Origin: Iphione sp. A-MEVVRFRX5
Lineage: Eukaryota
Reading direction: 5' to 3'
Assembly: GCA_976226885.1 (NCBI GenBank)
Contig: OZ320321.1
Location: 51,832,001-51,896,000, forward strand
Length of the DNA: 64,000 nt
The translations under genes were made by a program, and so were the position numbers. Under the pieces are notes generated by a model. It worked only from the letters and a program-made list of their open reading frames with translations. It was not told the origin of the DNA and did no database searches. Numbering within the stretch: the stretch's first letter is position 1; every line of letters starts with the position of its first letter. Of the stretch, positions 2,115-64,000 are shown in pieces.

Positions 2115-2251
2115 NNNNNNNNNNNNNNNNNNNNNNNNNNNNNNNNNNNNNNNNNNNNNNNNNNNNNNNNNNNNNNNNNNNNNNNNNNNNNNNNNNNNNN
2201 NNNNNNNNNNNNNNNNNNNNNNNNNNNNNNNNNNNNNNNNNNNNNNNNNNN
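2115..2251. other. Assembly gap (137 N) inside the intron between the two death-domain exons
   Basis: Run of N characters. Confidence 0.99.
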
Positions 2252-17010: not shown

Positions 17011-17066
<56 letters not shown>

Positions 17067-18400
17067 GAGAGGGTGGGGGGGAGGGAGGGAGAGAGAGAGC
17101 GCCATGCTACAGTGGGTCCGTGACGTGAAGACTCCTCTGTTATATGTTTGAGAATTTGCCGCATGCTCAAGTACATCGCCTTTATTGCCGATGGCTTGTG
17201 ACACAGAGTCCGTGTTGGCATAGGTGGGGGTGGGGAGTAGGGAGGTGTGGTTATTTGTTCCCGGCCGTCAAGCGGCGTATTCTGATATTCAGGTCGTCGG
17301 TCACGGCCTCTACTACCGCGCGTCAATAGCATACCCATCTGGGAAGTGACGTTTCCTTCTTTGAAGAGAATATATCGCACGGGGTCGTACCTCATACAAA
17401 GTCGTCTTCGTTGTGGAGATACTGGGTCTGGGAATGGCACACATCCTCTGAAGAAGACCCACGCCATAGTGCGCGGCGGGGGGTGCGGGAGAAAGGCGAA
17501 TCTGATAGGAGGTGGTGGGTGGGTGGGTGGGGGGCATCTTTGGACGTCACGTCACGCTGATCGCTGTGCCAGCCTCAGCTGATGACTGGTGACCTTTTCT
17601 TCACGGAATGTCTCCATGTGAAAAACGAGCCGTATTTCCCTCGGGTTTTCTTTCGAGGTGGACTTCCTTCAGCTCATGTTAAAGCGTTTTTCAGCGGTTA
17701 GAATGTTGTTCGGCGACATGAAAACGTGCGGTGATGTGCTTAAAGAGCAGCCAAAGCCAACTGTAATGGAGCTGAGTGGCCAGATAATTAAAGCATCTTA
17801 CCTGTCATTCCAGGGGATGAGCAGAAGCTCAGATTTATGTTACAGTGCGGCCCACAGGCATGAGTGGACCCCCCCTCGTTGTACAGAGGTAGTCTCAATA
17901 GTCTACCTCGGCTTCCGAGGAAATTGCCCTTGGTGAGTGATATTGCACTCTGTTGAGATCGTTCGGAACAAAGGTCATTGAGTTGTACTGGCACAGTCTT
18001 ATTTATCTTCCTCTTGTTTGATGTCGTATTCCATTGACGTGTTGTTCTACCTCTTGAAGAAGAGACAGACAGAGTTAAAGGGAGAGAGAGAGAGAGGGAG
18101 AGAGAGAGAGAGAGAGGGAGGGAGAGGGAGAGAATAAGAGAGAGAGACAGAGGGATGGAGGGAGGGAAACAGGTACAGCTGTTCAGTTACAGCAGAGCGT
18201 TAGGATTAAAGGAAAAACAAGTGAAGGTATACCTCCCATTCAGTCCGGAGGATTTGTCATTGTCTGGAGGACCGGGACCACGTCGGCTGGCGTCGAAGAG
18301 GCGGATTATTCTGACCTTGCCGTCGTCTTTTGTCGTGTATAAGAGCAGCAGTTGGCCACAGACAAGACGCATTCTTCCGTGGTTTAGTGAGGAGTAAGTG
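17000..18400 (-). pseudogene. Weakly recognisable nAChR-like remnant (signal peptide/N-terminus and MA-like segment)
   Basis: MRLVCGQLLLL...IRLFD..PPDND (ORF 18187-18429). A splice-bounded segment at about 18045-17800 has YNSMTFVP...EVDY*DYLCTT and IPWND. ORF 17003-17467 has QILKHITEES..VAW. The similarity is marginal. Confidence 0.35.
17014..17099. repeat. Compound (GA)n/(GACA)n microsatellite
   Basis: Directly visible. A second GA-rich tract lies at about 18062-18165. Confidence 0.95.
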
Positions 18401-29240: not shown

Positions 29241-30420
29241 TCATACCATTTCACACCATCCGCAAACATAGCCTAGCCTTTCGGGTACGGAATGACAGGC
29301 ACTCCGGCTATCAACCGAGAGTATAATGTGACAATAGAACATACTACTTACTTTAGTGTAGTTTTTCTTAGACCAACCCGAGGACCGAAATTGCAGGCAG
29401 TAGAGCACCATCAGTTTCATAATAAGAAGGCGTCTTTCCATACTTATGAAAGAAATACTATTTTTCTCACGGATGGGGTAGAAATAGCACCATTTCTCTC
29501 CTATAGCCATGTGTAAATAATTCTAGATGTTAATCCCAGAGTAGGAGTAATCAGTAGCTATACCCTTTACGTTTTCGCGCATGCGTTCGGTATATAGTTC
29601 TGATGACCTCTTCTGCGTGCAACCTACATATATCTGTTTCTGTTAGATGCATTTGGTGGAAAATGTGCACAGACAAATAGTAATGGAAAGCTATAACCAT
29701 ACAATGTAGCCCTTACTTAAATACACAAGTTTAGAATAAATGTGTTTCCGAATAATCCTAAATGCAGAAACTTCGGGTAGCTTTCTTGCATGCCTTAATA
29801 CAACGACAGGTGTACATAACAATTATCGTTATACATATTTATTCCCGAGCAATTTACTCCTGTTATACTCAGTATTTCCGCCTGTACATTCCCGCTTTCC
29901 TCACTGAGTTTGACCTTCGACTTGTTGTTGTGGTCGTGGTCGACCCATTCGTCATTTACCACCTTCAAATACTAAACAAGGACTAGCATTTGCAGGAAGG
30001 GGCAGCAAACAATCAAGCGCAGGAAAAGGTCAATGGCCACCGTATTTTCGACAAAGGGAAGCTACTGTTTCAACAATGTAATCGTCAGATGACTGTCACA
30101 TATTTGCTATAATATTTTAAGTAATGCGCTGACGGAACGGCGACTTCTGGTCAAAACCGTGTTATGTTACGGGATATTGTTAAAGTGATAATGGATTCGC
30201 TAGAAATTATACACGTATATAGAGAGTGGTTCCTCCCTAAGCAACATTTTCTGTTCCTAGGGCTCTGTTGGTCATATGAACCTTGTCACTTGTGGAAATA
30301 GCAAATACTAATGTGTCTCATGAAGTGTTTTGAAGACATTGGTCTGTGGCACCTCTTGTTTGTTCAAGGTGTTTCTGAGCGACCTCACCTCTTCCCCCTG
30401 TCCCACACTGGCTGACGGAA
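29241..30420 (-). pseudogene. nAChR-like remnant directly 3' of the LINE poly(A)
   Basis: QTNVF and RFI*PTEP*EQK (about 30345-30250), VVNDEWV (about 29960-29940) and IGEKWCYF (ORF 29241-29510). The individual matches are weak but correctly ordered. Confidence 0.35.
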
Positions 30421-30684
30421 GTTTTTTTTTTTTTTTTTTTTTTTTATTCAGATATTTCACCTGGCAAGATTATGTTGCCAGGATTTGACTACATCGAGAT
30501 TGTAAGGCTTTTCTTAGTGACTATATACATGGACAGCTATGTACAGTATACACACGAATATATACAATATTTACATATATATACAGATATATATACATAG
30601 GTAATCGATAAGAATGGTCTTAATGTAGGACATGGGGAAGTAATAGCAGGTCTAGGTGATTGTACTTTATTGATCCCTATGTTC

Positions 30685-33516
30685 CTAATGTACCCTCAAG
30701 TTCTCCTTCGAGAGCTTGTTAATGAGATGTTTTTTGAGTTCTTTCTTAAATAGAGGTTTATTAGTTATTTTCATAGCATCTGGAAGGCGGTTCCATTCGA
30801 GTAGAGTTTGATACAAAGGACTGGTTCTGTAATGGTTAGTTTTTGGACGATTCGTAGGAATTTGAGCATTTCTTAGTCTATTGGTTTGCTTAATAACCAT
30901 GAATCGAGTCTGTAGATAGTCATGATGTATTGTTAGTGAGTAATAGGTGCTTTTACCCCGGAACGGTAAGATATTATTTGCTTTCATAATGGTCGAATAA
31001 TCATTTCCTACTGGTCGAAATACTATTCTCACTGCCTTGAGTAGTTGTTTCTCAAGTCTGAGAAAAAGTGGTGAGTCGTAGCACTTAATAGAGCCTATAC
31101 CATATTCCAAGTTGGGAATAAAGTAACTCTTCAAAACTAAAATATTTGCCTTTTTGTCCACGAGATTAGAGGCATGTTTTAGCAAGTTCAGTAGTGAGTA
31201 TGATTTCTTTATTTTACAAGTTAATTCGTCCACCATGCTCAGTGTCGAGTCAAGTAAGAAGCCTAGATATTTGTACCTAGGGACTTGGTTAATTATATGG
31301 TCATTAATTTTAATGTTGAGTTTCTCATTCCTTAGCTTGCTTCTAGGCCTGGTGAATAGCATAGATTCAGTTTTAGTGTAATTGATTGATATTCCATTGT
31401 CCTTACACCAGTTACTTAGCTTCAAGATGTTTTGATTGAGATTACTTTGTACTTGGTCCAAATTTTGACCACTGCATAGTATTACCGTGTCGTCAGCATA
31501 CATGATCGTTAGGCAATTTTGTAGTTCTGAAAGACAATCATTAATAAACAAGCTGAAGAGCATCGGCCCTATTGTACTTCCTTGGGGTACACCGAGCTTC
31601 AAGGGGTGTTCCTTCGAGTATGATCCATTGACTTTGGTTATGATTGATCGGTTAGCAAGGTAGTTCTCAAACCAGGAGGCTGTTTGCCCCAGACCCATTT
31701 TAAGTAGTTTTTTGATCAATACAGGATGTTGAAGGGAGTCGAAAGCTTTCCTGTAGTCTATGAAGAGTGCCCCTACTACCTCACCCTCGTTTAGTTTATC
31801 ATAGATGTAGCCTAATAATTTGTCTAGCGCTTGCACTGTGGAACGTCCCTTACGAAATCCAAATTGATTTTCAGAGAGTAAGTCATTGCTCTCTACGAAT
31901 TTCATAGTTTGATCGAATACTATTGTTTCCAATATCTTACAGGGTAGGGGTAGGATGCTGATAGGTCGGTAGGAGTTAGGGTCAGTCCTGGGACCTTTGC
32001 CTTTATAGAGTGGTGTTATGGTAGCTGTTTTCCAGCATCTCGGAATAATATTGTTTTCAAGAGAGCAGTTGATAAGATGAGTGAATTGACTTGCAAGAAT
32101 TCGAGCACACCGTAAGAAAACTCTAGTATTACAATAGCTAAGACCACTAGGTTTTGCTTTGTTGATACCATCAATAATTTTCAAGAACACATTAGTAGAT
32201 ACTTTGTTGAAAACTAACTCTGTTTTTGCTTTCTTAATGCCCGAGACAGTCAGATGGCTATCAATATTATATGTAGAGTTACCAATGGTAGCAAAATGGT
32301 GGTTCAATTTCTTTGCAACTTCAGAGTTTGTGAGTTGCTGATTATTTTCCCAGATGCTAATAGGCGGTGAGCTTTTACTTTTGCCTAGCAGTGACGATAG
32401 TATTCTCCAATAGCTTTTTGGGTTGTGCTGATTTCGTGTTAACTGTTCTTGGATAAATGTAGCCTTTTCACGATGTAGTCTTTCACGTACTACAGCCTTC
32501 TGGTGTTGTGCTCTATTAAAAAGGGACTGATTTTTTAGTCTAAGTGCGCTCTTATATAGTCTGTTCTTTTCAGTTATAAGTCTCCTAGTGTCATCTGATA
32601 TCCAGATACTCTGTTCCTTAAAAGAAGCTGAATGTTTTATGGGCCAGATCGCATTGATAGTGTTTTCTAACTGTTTGGAGATGAAGTTCCATAGATAATC
32701 AGGGTCTCTTTCTTCGAAAAATCGAGACCAGTCTGATCCCATCAGGACTTTTTCAAGTTGGATATCGTGGACATCATTCCATGGGCGATATGGCAAGTAA
32801 GTTTTGTCTACCGGCGCTGTATCAAGGTTAATGTCCAGTTTTATACTATAATGATCACTTAAAAAAGTTTGAAGGACCTTTGTTTTCACTACTAGATTAT
32901 TGCTCAAAAAGGCTAGATCCAGACAGCTCTTACTTGTCATACTTACCCGCGTTGGGGATTTTACACATTGAGTTAGCGAGTAGTTGTGGCATACATGTTC
33001 AAGTTCATTATAAGGCATATTGTGTTTTTTAAGGGCGTCTATATTGAAATCACCGATCAGTACAACATTGGAGGTTAAGTCACAAATGTGTTCCAGCTGC
33101 TCATCAATAGTATGTAGGAACTCGTTAAGTTGACCAGCTGGGGGTCTGTAAATTAGACCTATAGTAATCTGATGTTTGGGTGCAGTGATTAGGTTAACCC
33201 ATATTATTTCAATGTTCCTGTTCGAAAGCGCATAATGAGCGAATTTGGTGCTATCTGCTTGTATATAGCTCTTGATGTAAAGTAGGATGCCTCCTCCAAT
33301 ATTATACGTTCTATCAAGTCTTGTTATGTTATATCCCGGTACATTAACGCAGGCATTTGGTATAGAATTTGTTAACCATGATTCAGAAATGGCGATTACA
33401 TCCGGGTCATGTGGAGTTATTAAACCTTCAAGTTCAGTAATCTTATTCTTAAGACTTCGAATGTTGAGATGAAGAACTTTTAGGTACCTTACATTTTCTT
33501 TGTTTTTTCTTGACAT
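30685..33516 (-). CDS. LINE ORF2: apurinic-like endonuclease plus reverse transcriptase (943 aa)
   Basis: APE motifs HLNIRSL, ISESWL, IYRPP, GDFNID, LDL and SDHY. RT motifs YRPISILP, QFGFRKGRST, DYRKAFDS, GVPQGSTIGPMLF, YADD (31500-31489) and KYLG. No stops. Confidence 0.97.
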   Translation of the reverse strand: MSRKNKENVRYLKVLHLNIRSLKNKITELEGLITPHDPDVIAISESWLTNSIPNACVNVPGYNITRLDRTYNIGGGILLYIKSYIQADSTKFAHYALSNRNIEIIWVNLITAPKHQITIGLIYRPPAGQLNEFLHTIDEQLEHICDLTSNVVLIGDFNIDALKKHNMPYNELEHVCHNYSLTQCVKSPTRVSMTSKSCLDLAFLSNNLVVKTKVLQTFLSDHYSIKLDINLDTAPVDKTYLPYRPWNDVHDIQLEKVLMGSDWSRFFEERDPDYLWNFISKQLENTINAIWPIKHSASFKEQSIWISDDTRRLITEKNRLYKSALRLKNQSLFNRAQHQKAVVRERLHREKATFIQEQLTRNQHNPKSYWRILSSLLGKSKSSPPISIWENNQQLTNSEVAKKLNHHFATIGNSTYNIDSHLTVSGIKKAKTELVFNKVSTNVFLKIIDGINKAKPSGLSYCNTRVFLRCARILASQFTHLINCSLENNIIPRCWKTATITPLYKGKGPRTDPNSYRPISILPLPCKILETIVFDQTMKFVESNDLLSENQFGFRKGRSTVQALDKLLGYIYDKLNEGEVVGALFIDYRKAFDSLQHPVLIKKLLKMGLGQTASWFENYLANRSIITKVNGSYSKEHPLKLGVPQGSTIGPMLFSLFINDCLSELQNCLTIMYADDTVILCSGQNLDQVQSNLNQNILKLSNWCKDNGISINYTKTESMLFTRPRSKLRNEKLNIKINDHIINQVPRYKYLGFLLDSTLSMVDELTCKIKKSYSLLNLLKHASNLVDKKANILVLKSYFIPNLEYGIGSIKCYDSPLFLRLEKQLLKAVRIVFRPVGNDYSTIMKANNILPFRGKSTYYSLTIHHDYLQTRFMVIKQTNRLRNAQIPTNRPKTNHYRTSPLYQTLLEWNRLPDAMKITNKPLFKKELKKHLINKLSKENLRVH

Positions 33517-33954
33517 AAAATAAGTCTATCTAAATTTAGAAAAAATCGATATAATTAAATTTAAACTAAAATAAAATAAGGTTCCCTCGATAGTTGATAA
33601 GGGAGTGTCGATTAATGGCGGACCGGGGGAGATTGCTAGTAAAAAAGACATTCAACCAGGTCTCTATCGAGGCCAGTGGCCGCTTGTGCTAGAAGCTTGT
33701 CATTTATTCGTACAATGACAATGACAATGACAGTAATATAGGAGGTAATTGAATATATAATCACAGTGTAAACAATCGGACTGTCACAGGTAGGAAAACC
33801 GAGCTATGTACAATCAAGTTGTTGGAATACCACATATATTATCTGCTATGAGTCACATGCTGAACCCTCGCTACGATGTGAGAAATACAGCAACTCTGAG
33901 TGATACAACGTCTCTGGGTCTCCTAAAGCGAGACCTGCTGAAACAAAGTGGTGA

Positions 33955-34638
33955 TCATTCATGGAGTTTAGCTAAGAATTTAACGAACTTGGTCACCATT
34001 TCACGTTGCCCCTGCTGGTTCAGATGACAGCCATCCACTAGTAGCTGGTGTCGGTTGGTGTCTCTGCCGTTCGATCTGCCGTGTATGATGCTCCCGATGT
34101 GAGGTGTTGTGAGACCATGGGATTGGTTGAAAGCACGAATTCCGTTGTTGATTTCATGCATTGCCTCATTCAGTGCGAATTGGACAGCATTAGACGTCTT
34201 CCCTGAAATGTATTCTCCACGCAGGTGACTATTATAGTTTTGCAAATCAGGACAGAAGAACTCAGAGTATGCAACAAATGAAAATGGGAAACGCTTAGAG
34301 ATTCTGTTGAAGCTAGTTTGGAACAGCAGTGACATTCTAAGAGGAATATTGGATATGTCGTCATCCGGCAAGTAGACCTGCTTGCAGATTCTACCATCAT
34401 TTAGTACACATTGTCTGTTCAGGGCAGTAACGTCATTTGTGCCAACCAACATGACAATATAAAGAGGTGAGCAATCAAAAGGAAAGTCAAGTACCTTTTT
34501 AGTGAGTTCACCACACCCGACCCCCGGGTAGAACTCCACTGTCACGTTAAGTCCTCTATTCCTCAGATCACGCTCCAAATTCCTCCCATGAGAATCCGAG
34601 AAGATGAAAACGGACTCCGGACATTTTGGTTGATTCAT
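33955..34638 (-). CDS. LINE accessory ORF: SGNH/GDSL-type esterase (227 aa)
   Basis: All SGNH blocks are present: FSDS16HG (block I), YPG39 (II), GTN68D (III) and D202GCH205 (V). The catalytic triad is intact. Esterases are established cargo of some CR1/L2/RTE-group elements. Confidence 0.9.
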   Translation of the reverse strand: MNQPKCPESVFIFSDSHGRNLERDLRNRGLNVTVEFYPGVGCGELTKKVLDFPFDCSPLYIVMLVGTNDVTALNRQCVLNDGRICKQVYLPDDDISNIPLRMSLLFQTSFNRISKRFPFSFVAYSEFFCPDLQNYNSHLRGEYISGKTSNAVQFALNEAMHEINNGIRAFNQSHGLTTPHIGSIIHGRSNGRDTNRHQLLVDGCHLNQQGQREMVTKFVKFLAKLHE

Positions 34639-34647
34639 GATAAGTCA

Positions 34648-36432
34648 CTATGTTGTAGTTGTGGTGGCACTGGTGGTCTCTGAGCTGAGGCCGGACTCAG
34701 TGTGTGTCGAAGTGGTGGTAATGGGAAGTTGAGTGCTAGGGTGTGTGTCAGTGTGGTCTTGCTGCCTGTCTGTCTGTGAGTGTGAATGTGACGGTTGTGT
34801 GAGACGGCGTCTTGGCTTGCGTACTGGACGCTTCTGTGCTGCGCTGTACTCCTGAAGTCCCCTCAGTTCACCCCTAACTTTGCATAGAATTTCACCCGAC
34901 CAGTTAGTACCAGTGAATGTTCTCTGACCAATCAGAGCAGACCGTAGGCTAGCTGCCGCACCCCACTCTGCGTCAAGCGACGCTTCAACTAATTTGTATT
35001 CACCCGTTGAGCCAAGTTTGGCTCTGAGAGACTCGTTTTGACTGAATTTTGAATGAGTCACAGCATGCATAACTGACTTTCTCTTCTCCTCTGTCAGAGC
35101 CGGTAGCCCCGTCAGGGGTTTTACTTTTCGCGCTATTTGAGTGGGGTCGTTAATCCCCATTATGTCATTGCATAGTGCAGTGTTGCCGACTTCCCCCGCC
35201 ATGATAGCGCTATGGGCTTGTATAGTCGAGTTGTATGTGATATTGTCGTGTGTGAATGTACACTTATATGTGTTTGAGAGCGGGTGGTTTTTCCCATAGA
35301 AAGCCCATGTGTCCTCGCTTAAGCGTTCAGACGCTTTCTCCAAACTGATGCCTGGGGGGAGTCTGTGTAGTGTTTTTGATGTGTATGCACTTCCATTAAT
35401 TATCACTTTATTACCCTCCAATTTGGTCTCATATTCCAAACTTTTCGCTAGGTGATATATGCTCCTAAGCTCCGCTCTGTTCAACTTTTCTGATGCAGCC
35501 AGATCATCGTTCACCCAAATACCGCGGAGTGTTTTGAGGTTTCCTCTCCCCATGAGAATTTGTTTGCGTGTTTGCGGTCTTGTGAAGCGTACTCTGATCT
35601 CTCTTACCCTCGTGTCAGTTTTCTGCCCTATTCGGTAGCAATTGTCTATATCTGAGAGACGGAAAGTTGGGTCAGCTTTTTGGAATATCTCTGTTAACCT
35701 ACTGGATAGGCGTTGATAGTTCTCCCCTCCCTCTTCTGGAAGTCCTGCCACTATGAGATTGTTTGCACGCGCGTCCCTCTTTAGAGTTTCTACCTGTTCG
35801 GATAGGTTGTTAATCTTGTTAATGAGGCTAGCTGGGACTTGCGATTCAGATTGTTTTGAATTTTCCAAAATGTCCACTCTCGCTTTGAGGGACGCATTCT
35901 CAGTCTCAAGGTTCAGTATTTTTTCCTTCTGATGCAACAGATTCGTTGTTACCTCACTTATCATGTCATTATTGCTTTTAATGCCCCTGTTGAAAGTGTC
36001 ATGTATTTTTCTGGTTTCGGAGATGTGTTCATTTAGAATGCCACTGAACTGCTCAAACATTGATTGCATATCTTTTTTGATGTCATTGAACATACCTTGA
36101 ACGAGAAGGGGGTTTGCAAGATCATGAGTAGTTGGTTGCTGACTAAGTTTTTGTAGTGACTTAAGCACATCGCTTCTATCAGGTGAGAAACACAGCGACG
36201 ACTCAGAGTGCGACAGAGTGTCGTCTCTGTTTTTTTTCAATTCAAGATTGCCATCAATTGGGCTTACCTCCTTTCTTTTTACTCCGCTGTCCCTTGGATA
36301 AGGGGTTACGTCCACACTTGAGCCGTCTTGGGGAATCTTTGGCTGTACAGGCGTGGATACTGTCGGGGAGCCTATAACCTCGTTTACATAGGCCGCTGCT
36401 GAGTCCAGTAGTATGTTGGCCGTTGAATCCAT
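34648..36432 (-). CDS. LINE ORF1 (594 aa): disordered N-terminus, coiled coil, L1/Tnp22-like RRM region, NADAR (YbiA-like) domain, basic and Thr-rich tail
   Basis: Heptad region at aa about 113-220. RANNLIVAGLPE...IDNCYRIG...REIRVRF...IWVNDDL is the typical L1-like ORF1 RRM/CTD. aa about 376-524 FYGKNHPLSN...VM...KFSQNESLRAKLGSTG..LVEASLDAEWG...GTNWSGEILCKVRGEL follows the NADAR consensus. Confidence 0.92.
   Translation of the reverse strand: MDSTANILLDSAAAYVNEVIGSPTVSTPVQPKIPQDGSSVDVTPYPRDSGVKRKEVSPIDGNLELKKNRDDTLSHSESSLCFSPDRSDVLKSLQKLSQQPTTHDLANPLLVQGMFNDIKKDMQSMFEQFSGILNEHISETRKIHDTFNRGIKSNNDMISEVTTNLLHQKEKILNLETENASLKARVDILENSKQSESQVPASLINKINNLSEQVETLKRDARANNLIVAGLPEEGGENYQRLSSRLTEIFQKADPTFRLSDIDNCYRIGQKTDTRVREIRVRFTRPQTRKQILMGRGNLKTLRGIWVNDDLAASEKLNRAELRSIYHLAKSLEYETKLEGNKVIINGSAYTSKTLHRLPPGISLEKASERLSEDTWAFYGKNHPLSNTYKCTFTHDNITYNSTIQAHSAIMAGEVGNTALCNDIMGINDPTQIARKVKPLTGLPALTEEKRKSVMHAVTHSKFSQNESLRAKLGSTGEYKLVEASLDAEWGAAASLRSALIGQRTFTGTNWSGEILCKVRGELRGLQEYSAAQKRPVRKPRRRLTQPSHSHSQTDRQQDHTDTHPSTQLPITTTSTHTESGLSSETTSATTTTT
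34861..35307 (-). other. NADAR/YbiA domain within ORF1
   Basis: Motif-by-motif match to E. coli YbiA as recalled: FY..FSNF, TSEHYFQAQK, VM..KFEQ..LR..L..T, LVE...D.YWG, G.N.LG..L..LR..L. Confidence 0.88.
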
Positions 36433-38760: not shown

Positions 38761-39023
38761 AAAACGATAACTCCTGTGTTTTGTTGTGTGTTCAACTATA
38801 GTTACTACTTTTGAAATATATTCAGTGCTGACAGTTACATAGTGTCACGTACGAGCAGCTGATACACCCTGACTAACAGGTCAGAAGGGTAGAGATGTAC
38901 AAATCAACTCCAACCCACTAAAATCTGGGTCACTCCACTGCAGGACCTCTGCTGGGTGTAACTCTCTCTCCAAGTGCAAAGAGAGAATGTCTGTTTATTC
39001 AGAAAATTGTGCCCTTTTATATG

Positions 39024-39132
39024 CATACAGTACCCTAGTGGCTTGCTCAATACCATGATGTCACATTAGACTGTATATACATACAGAGCCCTAGTGGCTT
39101 GCACAATACCATGATATTGCATTAGACTGTCA
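39024..39132. repeat. Two-copy 56-bp tandem duplication
   Basis: catacagtaccctagtggcttgctcaataccatgatgtcacattagactgt is repeated with a few substitutions at 39080. Confidence 0.85.
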
Positions 39133-53556: not shown

Positions 53557-53730
53557 CCCACTTGACAATATCCCCCACGTGAATGAAAGCCAACTCTTAC
53601 TGACGGCCCACTTGCCTAGACACTATCCCCCACATGAATGAAAACCATCTGTCACCGAGGGCCCACTTGTCTAGATACTATTCCCTACGTGAATGAAAGC
53701 AAACTCTGACTGAGGGCCCGCTTGTCTAAG
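53557..53730. repeat. 55-bp minisatellite, about 3 diverged copies
   Basis: Units start cccacttg at 53557, 53607, 53662 and 53717 (cccgcttg), with a shared core tat.ccc.ac.tgaatgaaa. Confidence 0.85.
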
Positions 53731-54037: not shown

Positions 54038-54137
54038 CCCTATCCAGGCGGGTGATGCCTTTTAGCATTCCCGGGTGAAGGACGGGTGATGCCCACAGGC
54101 ACTCCCGGGTGGAAACCGGGTGATGCCCACAGGCATT
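54038..54137. repeat. Short tandem array (cgggtgatgcc...ccgggtg) following a TTAA|CCC motif; possible piggyBac-like end
   Basis: There are three cgggtgatgcc units about 33-35 nt apart. TTAA at 54034-54037 is followed by CCCTAT. No matching opposite end was found. Confidence 0.45.
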
Positions 54138-61294: not shown

Positions 61295-61968
61295 ATGCCT
61301 GGCGGATATCACCGGCCTGTGTCGCCTGTACCGCGGCCGCGTTCGCCGCATCATTCGCCACAGCACCAGCCAGGCCGTCGCAACAGCCCTGGACATCGGT
61401 CGCCGCACGGTAGCGGGCACAGCTCCCCGCACTACGGCCACTCGGGCCACGCCTCTTCTCACCAAGGTCACGCGTCGCCGCATCACGGTCACGGCTCAAC
61501 GCGTCACGGTCACGGTTCGCCTCATCACGGCCACGCCTCGCCGCACCACCACGGCTACGGAGTGCCCAGTAACAGACACGCCGAACAAGGCAGCCACTAT
61601 CAAGCTGTGTCGGCGCCACCGCCGTCGTCATCGTCGTCGTCGTCATCGTCTCCTCCCACTGCGGCTGCCGGCTCCCACCATCACGCCATCCATCAGAGGC
61701 CAGTGTCGCCGCGCCTTCCCGCTCGAGGCAGCCCGGTCGGCGCGCCGGCTTCACGCGCAGTGCCCGACGGCGGTCCTACACCGGAAATGGCCGCCGCACA
61801 GATGCCCATTGCCACCTCGCGCCAGCCGCGCGAGCGCGCCAACCGCCACCGGCCGCCCGTCAAACGTATCCAGAGGCAAGACAGCCGTTGCATGGCGATC
61901 CACAAGAGTTATGACGACGACAAGATCGTCTTGCCAACCGGCCTCCCCGTTGATTACGCCAACTGCCA
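61295..61968 (+). CDS. His/Ser/Pro-rich coding exon (about 225 aa) of an unidentified gene; continues after a phase-2 intron
   Basis: ATG at 61295 in a GC-rich stretch with a strong GC3 bias, and a donor CA|GTGAGT at 61969. A possible upstream UTR acceptor tcttaCAG lies near 60921. The low-complexity N-terminus is followed by the complex segment RQDSRCMAIHKSYDDDKIVLPTGLPVDYANC. The product is not recognised. Confidence 0.75.
61448..61555 (+). repeat. In-frame 21-nt tandem repeat encoding H(A/G)SPHHG-type heptads (5 copies)
   Basis: Units start at 61448, 61469, 61490, 61511 and 61532: HASSHQG HASPHHG HGSTRHG HGSPHHG HASPHHHG. Confidence 0.9.
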
Positions 61969-64000
61969 GTGAGTATCCTCATTTATTTCTGACTTGTACT
62001 GAACGGCTTTCGATGGAGTGGGCTCGCGCATAAATGAAACCCGTAATATAAGAAAGAATTCAGCGCGAACACGCGAAGTGCACATTTGCTTTTCTCGGTT
62101 ACCCGTGGTTTCAGCAGTCACCGCAAACGTCTTCAAACCTGCATTTCCATATACTACTCTCGATTTTGGCCCGGGGATGCGCACTATATACTACTTACTC
62201 ACTTGTTTTCATATGCACATTATGAGAAGGGCAATATTTCATTACACATGCTTTACACACGGCGCTATTAGACAATTTCGCATGTGATACAGACTTTCCG
62301 ATGCAGTACCGAAATTTTCAACTGACACGGCCTGTGAAACATGAAGAAACCTGAATACATTGCTAACGTAAGAAAATAAGTAAGATAAGAAAATAAATAA
62401 CAGCAGGCAGAAGATTTCAATGACGTCTGAATTTTACATAATTAATTTTGCATGTTTGGTATGAATAATTGCGGTTTTTGTATTTGAAGAGAATTTTTGG
62501 AATAATTTATTTGACGAGTGCCATTGATCCAGATTTTGGGTGGACCGACAGGCACGAAACTCAAAAACGGTAAAATCCGAATCGTGTAGCATTGCCAATA
62601 CTTTTAACAGTTACCCGCCTAGAAACAGGTACAAGGAAAGAAGTTCTCATATTTGAGCCTTCATTCATGCGCATTTTATCGGAACAAGAAACAATACCTG
62701 CGTAAATAAGAAATGTATGGAAAGAATCGTTGTTTTGGAGGATTCAGGCCAAACATATTAGCTAAGTGCTCTTTTTTAATGCAGGTAATTAATTGAGTGC
62801 TTTTAAAGTAGGCTTCACACTCCTCCTCCCTACACAAGATCGTTATTTGAGAACCTTAACGATAAAACAGCACATAAAGTAAGGACACTTCATTGATTCT
62901 ATGCCCATCCGCAATCTACCGTAAAACCTCAGTATTACGTCACCTCACTATAGCAGTACCCTCACTATAGCAGGCATAATTGTCAGGAACAGATTTTTGT
63001 ACTTCAATGCTTCATCTTAAGTGAGAACAATGCTTCATATTATGTGAAAAATGAGATGCATGATGATGAAAATTGGCGTGACTAAAATCCCTAGTCTTTG
63101 GGCTCCCTGCCCAAAGACTAGGGCATTACTGAACAGGCGGAGATGCATAACGTTTTTTGTTTGAACATTTATTTCATCTGGCATTCCAAATGGTGTCAGG
63201 ACATAGGTGCATACATAGTTTAACACATAGCTTATGGAAGGATTTTGTCCTCGCGGTCAAATTTACTCCAAAGGTTAATTGCAAAGTAATGTGATCCTTT
63301 TCATGCATAATTAATTTCGGTCATTCCTGTGTTACATATGTACCAGTTAATTGTTTGATTTAACCTTTGTAATTCTCTATGGCCTCAAAGTTTCGGCGAT
63401 TTCATTCGTCAAAGTCAGGCGATGTCTGCCTAGCTAGTTGACAGTTCCTCCCTCCCCCCCCACCCCCGTACTGCAAATGGTGTTTTGTTGCTTGGATCCT
63501 GGGAAGAGGCTTAACCATGTACAAACAGGTGAGCCTCGTAAATACAATCCGGGCGGGGCCTCCGCTGCATAGTAAAGCATCGAGCAGCATTTAACAAGTC
63601 GGCACTTTGTCCGCAGCTTTTGTGTTAAGTGACAGCAACAGCACGCAACCATTACTCGCTTACCACCAAATCCAGGCGCGGCAGGTAGTCGGACACGGCC
63701 TTCCTCTAAGGCTTTCTACTTGGGCAAACTGAGAACTCTTAAAGGGCGTCGAATAAACCGATATTTAACAGGTCTGACGGCGCAGCCAGACGTGATATGT
63801 GGGAAAAAAAAGGGTTTGATGTAAATGCACATTGGGTGTTGTCAGGAAATCAACTGGATATTGAGACAGTAGAAATGCTATATTAGTTCGGTTGTTTAAA
63901 AAAAATTGAATTTCGGATTGAGTTTGTCGCTTGGATTGTAGGCATTGTTTTTGGCCCGCGAGTAGGTCATTGCTATGCCGTTAGATACTATGATGTAGGA

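What the first reader, a model, noticed from the sequence alone, without database searches (positions are those of the whole stretch)
34648..36432. Retrotransposon ORF1 carries a NADAR (ADP-ribose/N-glycosidase-fold) domain
Seen: ORF1 of an intact LINE has a coiled coil and an L1-type RRM region, followed at aa about 376-524 by a full NADAR/YbiA motif set. Established: NADAR proteins include E. coli YbiA (N-glycosidase acting on riboflavin intermediates) and the DarT1 antitoxins that remove ADP-ribose from guanine in DNA. Described ORF1 modules of CR1/L2/Jockey elements are RRM, CCHC, PHD, esterase and Tnp22-like. I do not recall NADAR being described among them, but I cannot check the literature. 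Inference: the RNP may carry a module that reads or counters host ADP-ribosylation (PARP or nucleic-acid ADP-ribosylation) during target-primed reverse transcription, i.e. a transposon anti-defence or repair-hijacking domain.
Basis: partly seen in the sequence, partly recalled or inferred. Interest (0 to 1): 0.9.

Follow-up and report, generated by a model that had tools for sequence, protein, structure and literature searches.

The report
LINE ORF1 with degenerate NADAR domain
A jumping gene (LINE) in this window makes an L1-like RNA-binding protein fused to a NADAR (ADP-ribose-removing) fold; the fusion is common in related elements, but this copy has lost key active-site residues.

Summary
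The ORF is real: window 34648-36432, minus strand, 594 aa. It carries a long coiled coil, an L1-type RRM+CTD and a NADAR domain at aa 378-524 (Pfam E=2.4e-18). A high-confidence AF2 model matches the solved NADAR 8BAU, YbiA and human L1 ORF1p.

It lies in a poly(A)-tailed LINE with three intact ORFs.

The fusion is not a one-off capture. A search of 1.84 billion proteins gave 1320 hits at E<=1e-10. All 150 listed hits span RRM/CTD through NADAR. Every sampled locus long enough to reach downstream of ORF1 has a related APE-RT ORF after it. One such family has 99.8%-identical poly(A)-tailed copies.

Two claims fail. First, the "full motif set" is wrong. Of eight ADP-ribose-contacting positions in 8BAU, this copy has replaced three (Glu to Ile404, Lys to Met411, Trp to Thr447). 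Homologues keep them almost without exception, so this NADAR is probably not catalytic. Second, NADAR in LINE ORF1 has already been noted in passing, for oyster LINEs (PMC12477816, 2025).

An anti-ADP-ribosylation role is plausible for the family, untested, and unlikely for this copy.

The parts
34648..36432 (-). ORF1, 594 aa: disordered N-terminus, coiled coil, L1-type RRM, CTD, NADAR, low-complexity tail. It ends in two consecutive stops (TAG TGA).
36112..36432 (-). ORF1 aa 1-107, predicted disordered (pLDDT about 40-50)
35767..36111 (-). ORF1 aa 108-222, a single long helix (coiled-coil region, as in L1 ORF1p)
   Evidence: (many coiled-coil PDB hits)
35317..35766 (-). ORF1 aa 223-372, L1-type RRM (223-332) plus CTD-like sheet (333-372)
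   Evidence: 2ykp/2yko/2ldy, E 0.014-0.03, q213-338; family profile vs L1 ORF1p, E=5.7e-17; 2yko TMt 0.69
34831..35310 (-). ORF1 aa 375-534, NADAR fold (Pfam match aa 378-524 = 34861-35301). Active-site departures: Ile404 (35221-35223, ATA), Met411 (35200-35202, ATG), Thr447 (35092-35094, ACA).
34651..34830 (-). ORF1 aa 535-594, Ser/Thr/His/Gln-rich low-complexity tail (pLDDT <50 from aa 554 onward)
33955..34638 (-). Middle ORF, 227 aa, SGNH/GDSL-esterase-like. Its ATG lies 6 nt after the double stop of ORF1, in the same frame. Block I is SDS (Ser16), block III is GTND, block V is DGCH (Asp202/His205).
   Evidence: (weak GDSL hits, E 0.018/0.057)
33517..33954 (-). 438-nt non-coding spacer between the esterase-like ORF and ORF2
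30685..33516 (-). ORF2, 943 aa. APE at aa ~17-225 (32842-33468) and RT at aa 512-753 (31258-31983). Motifs GDFN155, SDH220, YADD673. C-terminal WNRLP908 motif; no CCHC knuckle.
30446..30684 (-). 3' UTR ending in AATAAA
30422..30445 (-). 24-nt poly(A) tail, the 3' end of the element

Best explanation
This is a young-looking, poly(A)-tailed non-LTR retrotransposon (LINE) with three ORFs.
- ORF1p is an L1-type nucleic-acid-binding protein (coiled coil, RRM, CTD) with a YbiA-type NADAR domain fused to its C-terminus.
- ORFx is a separate SGNH-esterase-like protein.
- ORF2p is APE+RT.

ORF1-NADAR is an old, co-inherited ORF1 type. It is shared by a very large and diverse set of LINEs whose hosts look like animals. 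In nearly all of them the ADP-ribose-binding and catalytic residues are conserved.

Inferred mechanism for those elements: ORF1p multimerises through its coiled coil and coats the LINE RNA in cis. This brings a glycohydrolase to the RNP that removes base-linked ADP-ribose (G- or C-ADPr, the known NADAR activity) from the RNA or from ssDNA/cDNA intermediates of target-primed reverse transcription.

In the window's lineage the fold is kept, but the catalytic Glu, the phosphate-binding Lys and a stacking Trp have been replaced by Ile, Met and Thr. Here the domain is most likely a non-catalytic remnant (pseudoenzyme), retained for structure or binding.

Shown: domain anatomy, family size, linkage to APE-RT, conservation pattern, and the residue losses in this copy.
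Inferred: loss of activity, the de-ADP-ribosylation role of the family, and any anti-defence meaning.
For: Anatomy.

Family:
- 3780 representative proteins match at E<=1e-3 and 1320 at E<=1e-10. All 150 listed match in one stretch that starts at or before aa 269 and runs to at least aa 478, so it crosses the RRM/CTD-NADAR junction.
- All 101 aligned members hit Pfam NADAR.
- The family profile hits 8BAU at 2.7e-35, YbiA at 4.3e-29 and L1 ORF1p at 5.7e-17.
- RRM-CTD and NADAR pairwise identities co-vary (r=0.62; largest of 500 permutations 0.075). This fits one old fusion inherited as a unit.

Linkage:
- A related APE-RT lies downstream in L001-L004, L005, L008-L010, L011 and L013.
- L001-L004 are 4.9-kb copies, 99.8% identical, with different flanks and poly(A) tails.

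Active site:
- Homologues have E (97) or D (3) at position 404, K/R in 89 at 411, and W in 99 at 447. The query has I, M and T, and is the only one of 101 lacking all three.
- These positions map to E43, K50 and W89 of 8BAU. The corresponding E88 and K95 of E. coli C7 NADAR are required for activity or rescue (PMC11543638).
- The codons ATA and ACA need two or more changes from Glu and Trp codons. This argues for lineage-level divergence rather than one recent hit.
- The query's NADAR:RRM identity ratio is 1.01, against a family mean of 1.23.

Known chemistry:
- NADARs reverse G- and C-ADPr on DNA and RNA. CARP-1-type guanine ARTs occur mainly in bivalves, and also in cnidarians and sponges (PMC12945103).

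Precedent:
- C. elegans SNA-3 is an RNP factor with three NADAR domains, one of which lacks the conserved residues (PMC9303266).
Against: - No second copy of this exact family could be found. I therefore cannot show that I404/M411/T447 are fixed in the lineage or under purifying selection.
- E483, D487 and W490 are retained, and residual or altered activity cannot be excluded.
- No biochemical data exist for any ORF1-NADAR.
- Hosts of the homologues are unnamed.
- The RT clade was not established by phylogeny.
Confidence: 0.6

Rival explanations
1. One reading: the NADAR domain of this ORF1p is a working module that removes or reads host ADP-ribosylation during retrotransposition, perhaps with an altered active site or substrate.
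For: - The fold is predicted at pLDDT about 97.
- Five of the eight ADPr-contact positions are kept or conservatively changed, including the YbiA-type Glu483, Asp487 and Trp490.
- The ORF is fully open inside an apparently recent element.
- E88A was only mildly defective in vitro in E. coli C7 NADAR.
Against: - The Lys equivalent (K95) is essential, and the Glu equivalent is needed for rescue in vivo. Both are replaced here by hydrophobic residues, and the Trp by Thr.
- None of 100 homologues shows this combination.
- No Trp lies between aa 377 and 489, and the first acidic residue after position 404 is Glu414, which does not sit at the catalytic position.
Confidence: 0.15
2. This copy is simply a dying element, and the active-site changes are random decay with no lineage-level meaning.
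For: - Only one copy is seen.
- No TSD was detected.
- No close relative exists in 15 billion proteins; the best hit is 33-35% identical.
- The nearest ORF2 relatives have a half-degenerate NADAR ORF (L013) or no ORF1 (L012).
Against: - All three ORFs (594, 227 and 943 aa) are open, catalytic motifs of APE, RT and esterase are intact, and a pure 24-nt poly(A) is present.
- Structural NADAR positions are kept while ligand-contact positions changed.
- Multi-nucleotide codon changes sit alongside zero stops. Neutral decay does not produce that pattern.
Confidence: 0.15
3. At family level the NADAR is not anti-defence. It processes the element's own RNA, for example by removing NAD-derived or ADP-ribose adducts at RNA ends, or by other N-glycosidase chemistry, as was proposed for RNA-virus NADARs.
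For: - PMC12477816 proposes RNA-intermediate processing.
- NADAR domains occur in nidovirus and flavi-like virus polyproteins.
- SNA-3 NADARs act in an snRNP.
- The domain is fused to an RNA-binding ORF1p.
Against: - The only demonstrated nucleic-acid activity of NADARs is base (G/C) de-ADP-ribosylation. Terminal-phosphate ADPr is removed by macrodomains, PARG and ARH3 in the table of PMC12945103.
- No experiment distinguishes the two readings.
Confidence: 0.2

Closest known systems
NADAR-containing ORF1 of Repbase 'Tx1' LINE families of Crassostrea gigas (noted in PMC12477816, 2025)
   Same: A YbiA-type NADAR domain inside the ORF1 protein of a non-LTR retrotransposon. Function unknown.
   Different: - That report is one sentence plus a supplementary figure. 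It gives no architecture, family size, linkage or active-site analysis.
- Those families are labelled Tx1. The window's ORF2 is 943 aa, has no C-terminal CCHC and carries a WNxLP C-terminal motif. One relative has an N-terminal PHD finger. From my own recollection, which is a lead and not a test, these features point to the CR1/L2/Jockey group.
- The window element also has a separate esterase ORF and a degenerate NADAR site.
Human/mouse LINE-1 ORF1p (PDB 2YKO/2YKP, 2LDY; Type II ORF1, Transposase_22)
   Same: Coiled coil followed by RRM and CTD. Fold match TMt 0.69; family profile E=5.7e-17.
   Different: L1 ORF1p ends after the CTD, whereas here a 160-aa NADAR domain and a low-complexity tail follow. 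The query itself gives no Pfam PF02994 hit.
Phytophthora nicotianae NADAR (8BAU) and E. coli YbiA (2B3W); DarT1-associated NADAR antitoxins
   Same: Same fold (TMt 0.73). The YbiA-type Glu (E125 equivalent), D130 and W133 equivalents are present.
   Different: These are stand-alone enzymes or antitoxins. The window domain lacks the E43, K50 and W89 equivalents. No ADP-ribosyltransferase partner is present in the element.
Esterase-type (Type IV) ORF1p of CR1/L2 LINEs, e.g. ZfL2-1 (PDB 4C1B; PMC3905857)
   Same: The SGNH block I Ser and block V Asp/His are conserved in the 227-aa ORF and in its two relatives. Foldseek top hits are SGNH hydrolases.
   Different: - In described elements the esterase is part of ORF1p behind a coiled coil, and no esterase ORF1p in Repbase had an RRM.
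- Here the esterase is a separate ORF sitting behind an RRM-type ORF1.
- There is no sequence hit to PDB chains, and the Pfam score is below threshold.
C. elegans SNA-3 (three NADAR domains, SL1 snRNP factor; PMC9303266)
   Same: A NADAR fold embedded in an RNP protein, with one domain lacking the conserved catalytic residues.
   Different: SNA-3 is a nematode-specific host gene, has no RRM/L1-type module, and is not a mobile element.
Ectocarpus Gypsy LTR elements with NADAR at the N-terminus of Pol (PMC12477816)
   Same: An independent recruitment of a YbiA-type NADAR by a retroelement.
   Different: It is an LTR element, the fusion is to Pol rather than to a Gag/ORF1 analogue, and the domain looks recently acquired from bacteria (57-58% identity).

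Membership tests
NADAR superfamily (PF08719), YbiA-type | Profile score above Pfam gathering threshold over the whole domain | tested here: met
   67.4 bits vs 35.1, profile positions 2-163 of 163, aa 378-524
NADAR superfamily (PF08719), YbiA-type | Fold matches solved NADARs | tested here: met
   AF2 pLDDT about 97 in the domain. 8BAU E=1.1e-9, TMt 0.73; 2B3W TMt 0.73.
NADAR superfamily (PF08719), YbiA-type | YbiA-subfamily Glu (E125 of 8BAU) plus D130 and W133 | tested here: met
   E483, D487 and W490 are present
NADAR superfamily (PF08719), YbiA-type | Catalytic/ribose-binding Glu (E43 of 8BAU; E88 of E. coli C7) | tested here: not met
   Ile404; homologues have 97 E and 3 D (role from PMC11543638)
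NADAR superfamily (PF08719), YbiA-type | Phosphate-binding Lys (K50 of 8BAU; K95 of E. coli C7) and stacking Trp (W89) | tested here: not met
   Met411 (homologues: 68 K, 21 R) and Thr447 (homologues: 99 W)
NADAR superfamily (PF08719), YbiA-type | TIGR02464 riboflavin-intermediate N-glycosidase equivalog cut-off | tested here: not met
   59.9 bits vs 73.7
NADAR superfamily (PF08719), YbiA-type | ADP-ribosyl (G/C) glycohydrolase or N-glycosidase activity | not testable with these tools
   Needs a biochemical assay
L1-type (Type II) ORF1p: coiled coil + RRM + CTD | Long coiled coil directly N-terminal to a single RRM followed by a CTD | tested here: met
   Helix 108-222, RRM 223-332, CTD 333-372. 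2YKO aligned over 178 columns, TMt 0.69.
L1-type (Type II) ORF1p: coiled coil + RRM + CTD | Sequence-profile membership (Pfam Transposase_22, PF02994) | tested here: inconclusive
   No PF02994 hit for the query, and only 1 of 101 family members hits at 7e-6. The family profile nevertheless hits L1 ORF1p chains at E=5.7e-17.
L1-type (Type II) ORF1p: coiled coil + RRM + CTD | Trimerisation and RNA binding/chaperone activity | not testable with these tools
   Needs experiment
Autonomous APE-type LINE | ORF2 with APE and RT domains and their catalytic motifs | tested here: met
   Exo_endo_phos and RVT_1; GDFN, SDH and YADD
Autonomous APE-type LINE | 3' poly(A) or repeat tail, and target-site duplication | tested here: inconclusive
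   A poly(A) of 24 nt follows AATAAA. No TSD was found within 3 kb upstream.
Autonomous APE-type LINE | Multiple dispersed copies | tested here: inconclusive
   One copy in the window, and the source genome is not searchable. The related family L001-L004 has near-identical dispersed copies.
SGNH esterase of LINEs (Type IV ORF1 module) | SGNH blocks I (Ser), III (G-x-N-D) and V (D-x-x-H) | tested here: met
   SDS with Ser16, GTND, and DGCH with Asp202/His205. Ser, Asp and His are invariant in three sequences that share 25-27% identity.
SGNH esterase of LINEs (Type IV ORF1 module) | Profile or fold membership | tested here: inconclusive
   Pfam GDSL scores of 16 and 14 bits are below cut-off. 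No PDB sequence hit. The AF2 model has pLDDT of only 50, yet Foldseek top hits are SGNH/GDSL hydrolases with TM about 0.5.
Tx1 clade (the clade named for oyster NADAR-ORF1 LINEs) | Long ORF2 with a C-terminal CCHC motif (criterion from my own recollection); RT phylogeny with Repbase references | tested here: not met
   No CCHC-like motif in the last 260 aa, and ORF2 is 943 aa. Only 59.9 bits to human L1 ORF2p, and no hit to the L1 endonuclease. RT phylogeny was not done because no references were available.
DarT1-NADAR toxin-antitoxin | NADAR encoded next to a DarT1 ADP-ribosyltransferase | tested here: not met
   The neighbours are an esterase-like ORF and APE-RT

The most novel reading that the evidence does not exclude
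ORF1p-NADAR LINEs are a large, previously uncharted class of retrotransposons that carry their own nucleic-acid de-ADP-ribosylase as a counter-defence. The target would be host base-ADP-ribosyltransferases (CARP-1/pierisin-like), which occur in the same marine invertebrate phyla. That would make base ADP-ribosylation of RNA or ssDNA a genome defence against retroelements. Many 'animal NADARs' in databases would then be LINE ORF1 proteins. The window's lineage would be one that lost this activity and instead carries a separate esterase ORF.
Probability: 0.2. Interest if true: 0.85.

Novelty: new variant of a known kind. Interest (0 to 1): 0.5.

Why it matters
LINE ORF1 proteins are the least understood part of these elements, and accessory enzymatic modules in them are rare; the esterase is the only well-studied case.

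This work shows three things:
- A NADAR fold fused to an L1-type ORF1p is not a curiosity of a few oyster families. It is a very large, old and still active ORF1 type whose catalytic residues are under strong conservation.
- This gives the ADP-ribosylation field a concrete eukaryotic context for NADARs, whose role in animals is stated to be unclear (PMC11125620).
- It makes testable the idea that base ADP-ribosylation acts on retroelement intermediates.

The window's own copy is a natural active-site-degenerate variant. It also combines an RRM-type ORF1 with a separate esterase ORF, a combination reported absent from Repbase esterase elements in 2013 (PMC3905857).

Tried and rejected
Searches that found nothing useful:
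- Word-indexed homology searches with ORF1 and with the esterase ORF. This reflects index sensitivity, not absence; the exhaustive search found thousands of hits.
- An exact-sequence look-up of ORF1.
- Two metagenome-contig scans, with ORF1 and with ORF2. No close relative was found, so no dN/dS or copy comparison was possible for this family.
- TSD searches, exact and with mismatches. The 5' end is undetermined.
- Two cluster look-ups of 20 homologues. They gave no organism names, so the host range of the family is only inferred from animal-type neighbouring genes (HNOBA, Glyco_transf_7C).
- An Rfam scan of the window.
- Pfam on six other window ORFs.

Ideas rejected:
- ORF1 and the esterase ORF are one ORF split by a nonsense mutation. 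They are in the same frame, but two consecutive stops (TAG TGA) separate them. None of the 150 listed ORF1 homologues (P0001-P0150), including those with long C-terminal extensions, shows esterase similarity.
- The element is Tx1 (see membership test).

Caveats and compliance:
- The esterase AF2 model is of low confidence. Its Foldseek result is used only as weak support.
- The N run at 2115-2251 was left untouched.
- No contig looked human.
Full report

Window 34648-36432 holds a 594-aa ORF on the minus strand.

Domain evidence:
- Pfam places a complete NADAR domain (PF08719) at aa 378-524, with E=2.4e-18 and 67.4 bits against a cut-off of 35.1.
- NCBIfam's YbiA-type model TIGR02464 scores 59.9 bits, below its equivalog cut-off of 73.7.
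- An AlphaFold2 model was built on an alignment with 100 homologues. It has pLDDT above 90 from about aa 140 to 530.

The model shows these parts:

| Residues | Feature |
|---|---|
| 1-107 | disordered |
| 108-222 | one long helix |
| 223-332 | RRM |
| 333-372 | small CTD-like sheet |
| 375-534 | NADAR fold |
| 535-594 | Ser/Thr/His/Gln-rich tail (pLDDT below 50 from aa 554) |

Foldseek against the PDB returns, in order:
- Phytophthora NADAR bound to ADP-ribose (8BAU): E=1.1e-9, TM 0.73.
- The human LINE-1 ORF1p trimer (2YKO): E=6.5e-9, TM 0.69.
- E. coli YbiA (2B3W): TM 0.73.

Sequence searches agree. The single sequence gives weak hits. The family profile gives strong ones: 8BAU 2.7e-35, YbiA 4.3e-29, L1 ORF1p 5.7e-17. 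So the coiled coil, L1-type RRM(+CTD) and NADAR architecture is confirmed.

**2. The element around it**

All of the following are on the minus strand.
- ORF1 ends in two consecutive stops (TAG TGA). Six bases later an ATG opens a 227-aa ORF at 33955-34638.
- This middle ORF has the SGNH-hydrolase blocks: SDS with Ser16, GTND, and DGCH with Asp202/His205.
- It has two distant relatives (25-27% identity) in the same position in other elements, and the Ser, Asp and His are invariant in them.
- Its Pfam GDSL hits are below threshold and its AF2 model is poor, at pLDDT 50. Even so, most of the best Foldseek matches are SGNH/GDSL esterases.
- A 438-nt spacer follows.
- ORF2 comes next (30685-33516, 943 aa), with APE and RT domains and intact GDFN, SDH and YADD motifs.
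- After that come a 3' UTR ending in AATAAA and a 24-nt poly(A) at 30422-30445.
- I found no target-site duplication and no second copy in the window, so the 5' boundary is open.

On ORF2 classification:
- It has no C-terminal CCHC knuckle and carries a WNRLP motif near its end. That motif is shared by the ORF2s of other NADAR-ORF1 elements.
- Its best relatives are at most 31% identical. They include one with an N-terminal PHD finger and proteins from a killifish and corals.
- It scores only 59.9 bits against human L1 ORF2p.
- From my own knowledge of LINE clades these features point to the CR1/L2/Jockey group rather than Tx1/L1. No RT phylogeny with references could be run, so this is a lead, not a result.

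**3. One-off capture or a family?**

An exhaustive HMMER search of 1.84 billion representative proteins with the whole ORF1 gave 3780 hits at E<=1e-3, 1320 at E<=1e-10 and 19 at E<=1e-30.
- All 150 listed hits share 25-35% identity with the query.
- Each matches in a single stretch that starts at or before residue 269 and runs to at least residue 478. It therefore crosses the RRM/CTD-NADAR junction.
- All 100 aligned homologues hit Pfam NADAR.
- Pairwise identities in the RRM-CTD part and in the NADAR part are correlated (r=0.62). The largest value in 500 label permutations was 0.075. This is what an old fusion inherited as a unit would give.

I fetched genomic context for five ORF1 homologues and for the two closest ORF2 relatives.
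- Every locus long enough to see downstream of ORF1 has an APE-RT ORF related to the window's ORF2, with tblastn E from 1e-20 to 7e-116.
- One family (L001-L004) consists of 4.9-kb copies. They are 99.8% identical, sit in different flanks and end in poly(A), so it was recently active.
- The esterase-like ORF is not general. It is absent from L001-L011. It is present in the two loci whose ORF2 is closest to the window's, L012 and L013.

**4. The active site**

In 8BAU, ADP-ribose is held by K50, R79, W89, R93, W133, D130, E43 and E125. In E. coli C7 NADAR the equivalents of E43 (E88) and K50 (K95), together with D171, are needed for guanine de-ADP-ribosylation or rescue from DarT1 (PMC11543638).

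I mapped these positions through the family profile, the direct alignment and the column table.

| 8BAU residue | Window ORF1 | 100 homologues |
|---|---|---|
| E43 | Ile404 | 97 E, 3 D |
| K50 | Met411 | 68 K, 21 R |
| R79 | Lys438 | 36 K, 20 D (not strongly conserved) |
| W89 | Thr447 | 99 W, 1 F |
| R93 | Arg451 | 36 K, 16 A, 15 E (not strongly conserved) |
| E125 | Glu483 | 96 E |
| D130 | Asp487 | 72 D, 19 N |
| W133 | Trp490 | 92 W |

- The window is the only one of 101 sequences lacking all three of Glu, Lys/Arg and Trp.
- Four further family-conserved positions also differ: F388T, Q408S, K434A and G493A.
- The codons ATA and ACA need at least two changes from Glu and Trp codons. The changes therefore look old, not like a single recent hit.
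- In the family, NADAR is more conserved than the RRM-CTD (identity ratio 1.23). In the window protein it is not (ratio 1.01).
The C-terminal motifs are complete.
- In the nearest ORF2 lineage, the one locus with an ORF1 remnant (L013) has only the C-terminal half of NADAR recognisable. This may hint that the esterase-carrying sub-lineage is losing NADAR function. It rests on single copies.

**5. How it most likely works**

Shown: the domain order, the linkage to APE-RT, the family-wide conservation of the ligand-binding residues, and their loss here.

Inferred for the family:
- As in L1, ORF1p multimerises through the coiled coil and binds its own RNA through the RRM-CTD. The NADAR is thereby concentrated on the RNP.
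- The only demonstrated nucleic-acid activity of NADARs is removal of ADP-ribose from guanine, and for some NADARs cytosine, in ssDNA and RNA (PMC11543638; PMC12945103).
- The likeliest role is therefore to keep LINE RNA, or single-stranded DNA intermediates of target-primed reverse transcription, free of base ADP-ribosylation.
- CARP-1-type guanine ADP-ribosyltransferases are reported mainly in bivalves, and also in cnidarians and sponges. NADARs are reported in molluscs, echinoderms, sponges, cnidarians and amphioxus (PMC11125620). An arms-race reading is possible but untested.
- An RNA-processing role, as suggested in PMC12477816, is the main rival.

Inferred for this copy: the domain is probably a non-catalytic remnant. 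SNA-3 of C. elegans is a precedent for a NADAR domain without the conserved residues inside an RNP factor.

**6. Comparison with what is known**

- The survey of Jockey-superfamily ORF1 modules lists RRM, CCHC, PHD, esterase, coiled coil and Tnp22 modules, and no NADAR (PMC4120745).
- The 2026 survey of vertebrate CR1-group elements does not mention NADAR either.
[quoted passage not shown] It also reports a NADAR at the N-terminus of Pol in an Ectocarpus Gypsy lineage.
- The fusion is therefore documented, but only in passing. Full-text searches found no other treatment.

New here:
- the L1-type context of the domain;
- the size and coherence of the family;
- the systematic APE-RT linkage;
- the three-ORF variant with a free-standing esterase ORF, where Schneider et al. 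found no esterase ORF1p with an RRM in Repbase;
- the degenerate active site of this copy.

**7. Verdict**

- This is a new variant of a known kind of element. The family-level biology is interesting and testable, but this copy is unlikely to be an active de-ADP-ribosylase.
- Interest is 0.5.

**Limits**
- No second copy of this family was available.
- No organism names could be obtained for the homologues.
- No RT reference phylogeny could be run.
- There is no biochemistry for any ORF1-NADAR.

Noticed in passing
window 33955-34650 (minus strand): ORF1 ends in a double stop (TAG TGA). An in-frame ATG 6 nt later opens a separate 227-aa SGNH-esterase-like ORF. An element with both an RRM-type ORF1 and an esterase ORF is unusual: in 2013 no esterase ORF1p in Repbase had an RRM (PMC3905857). 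The spacing suggests termination-reinitiation, which is untested.
   Followed up: partly
L012 4590-5252 and L013 3727-4392 (sample ERZ25767047): The two closest ORF2 relatives (30-31% identity) also have a ~220-aa esterase-like ORF upstream of ORF2. L013 additionally has a 261-aa ORF in which only the C-terminal half of NADAR is recognisable. L012 has no ORF1 similarity.
   Followed up: partly
L011 6350-12314: A 2.8-kb unit containing the whole 664-aa NADAR-ORF1 is tandemly duplicated (99.9% identical, 1 aa difference) upstream of a single ORF2. About 520-bp monomers are also repeated in the 5' region.
   Followed up: partly
L008 2132-4243: A 2.1-kb stretch with no ORF of 80 aa or more separates the NADAR-ORF1 from ORF2 in this family. 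That is far longer than the usual inter-ORF spacer.
   Followed up: partly
window 30411-30420 and 30128-30137 (minus strand): The 10-mer TTCCGTCAGC immediately follows the poly(A) tail and recurs about 280 nt further downstream in the flank. It may be chance or a repeated target sequence.
   Followed up: no
window 17014-17099, 18082-18152, 1329-1372: (AG)n/(ACAG)n and (CTGT)n microsatellites. GC skew is strongly positive across 14-20 kb.
   Followed up: no
window 39018-39130, 53564-53728, 54065-54135, 61448-61549: Short tandem arrays with periods of 56, 55, 34 and 21 nt. A 225-aa ORF (61295-61972) overlaps the last one and has no Pfam hit.
   Followed up: no
window 2115-2251: A run of 137 N (assembly gap or masked). 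It was left as is.
   Followed up: no
literature (PMC11125620, PMC12945103): The ADP-ribosylation literature treats metazoan NADARs as host proteins. Given the size of the ORF1-NADAR family found here, some 'animal NADAR' database entries may be LINE ORF1 proteins. I did not check this against their accession lists.
   Followed up: no
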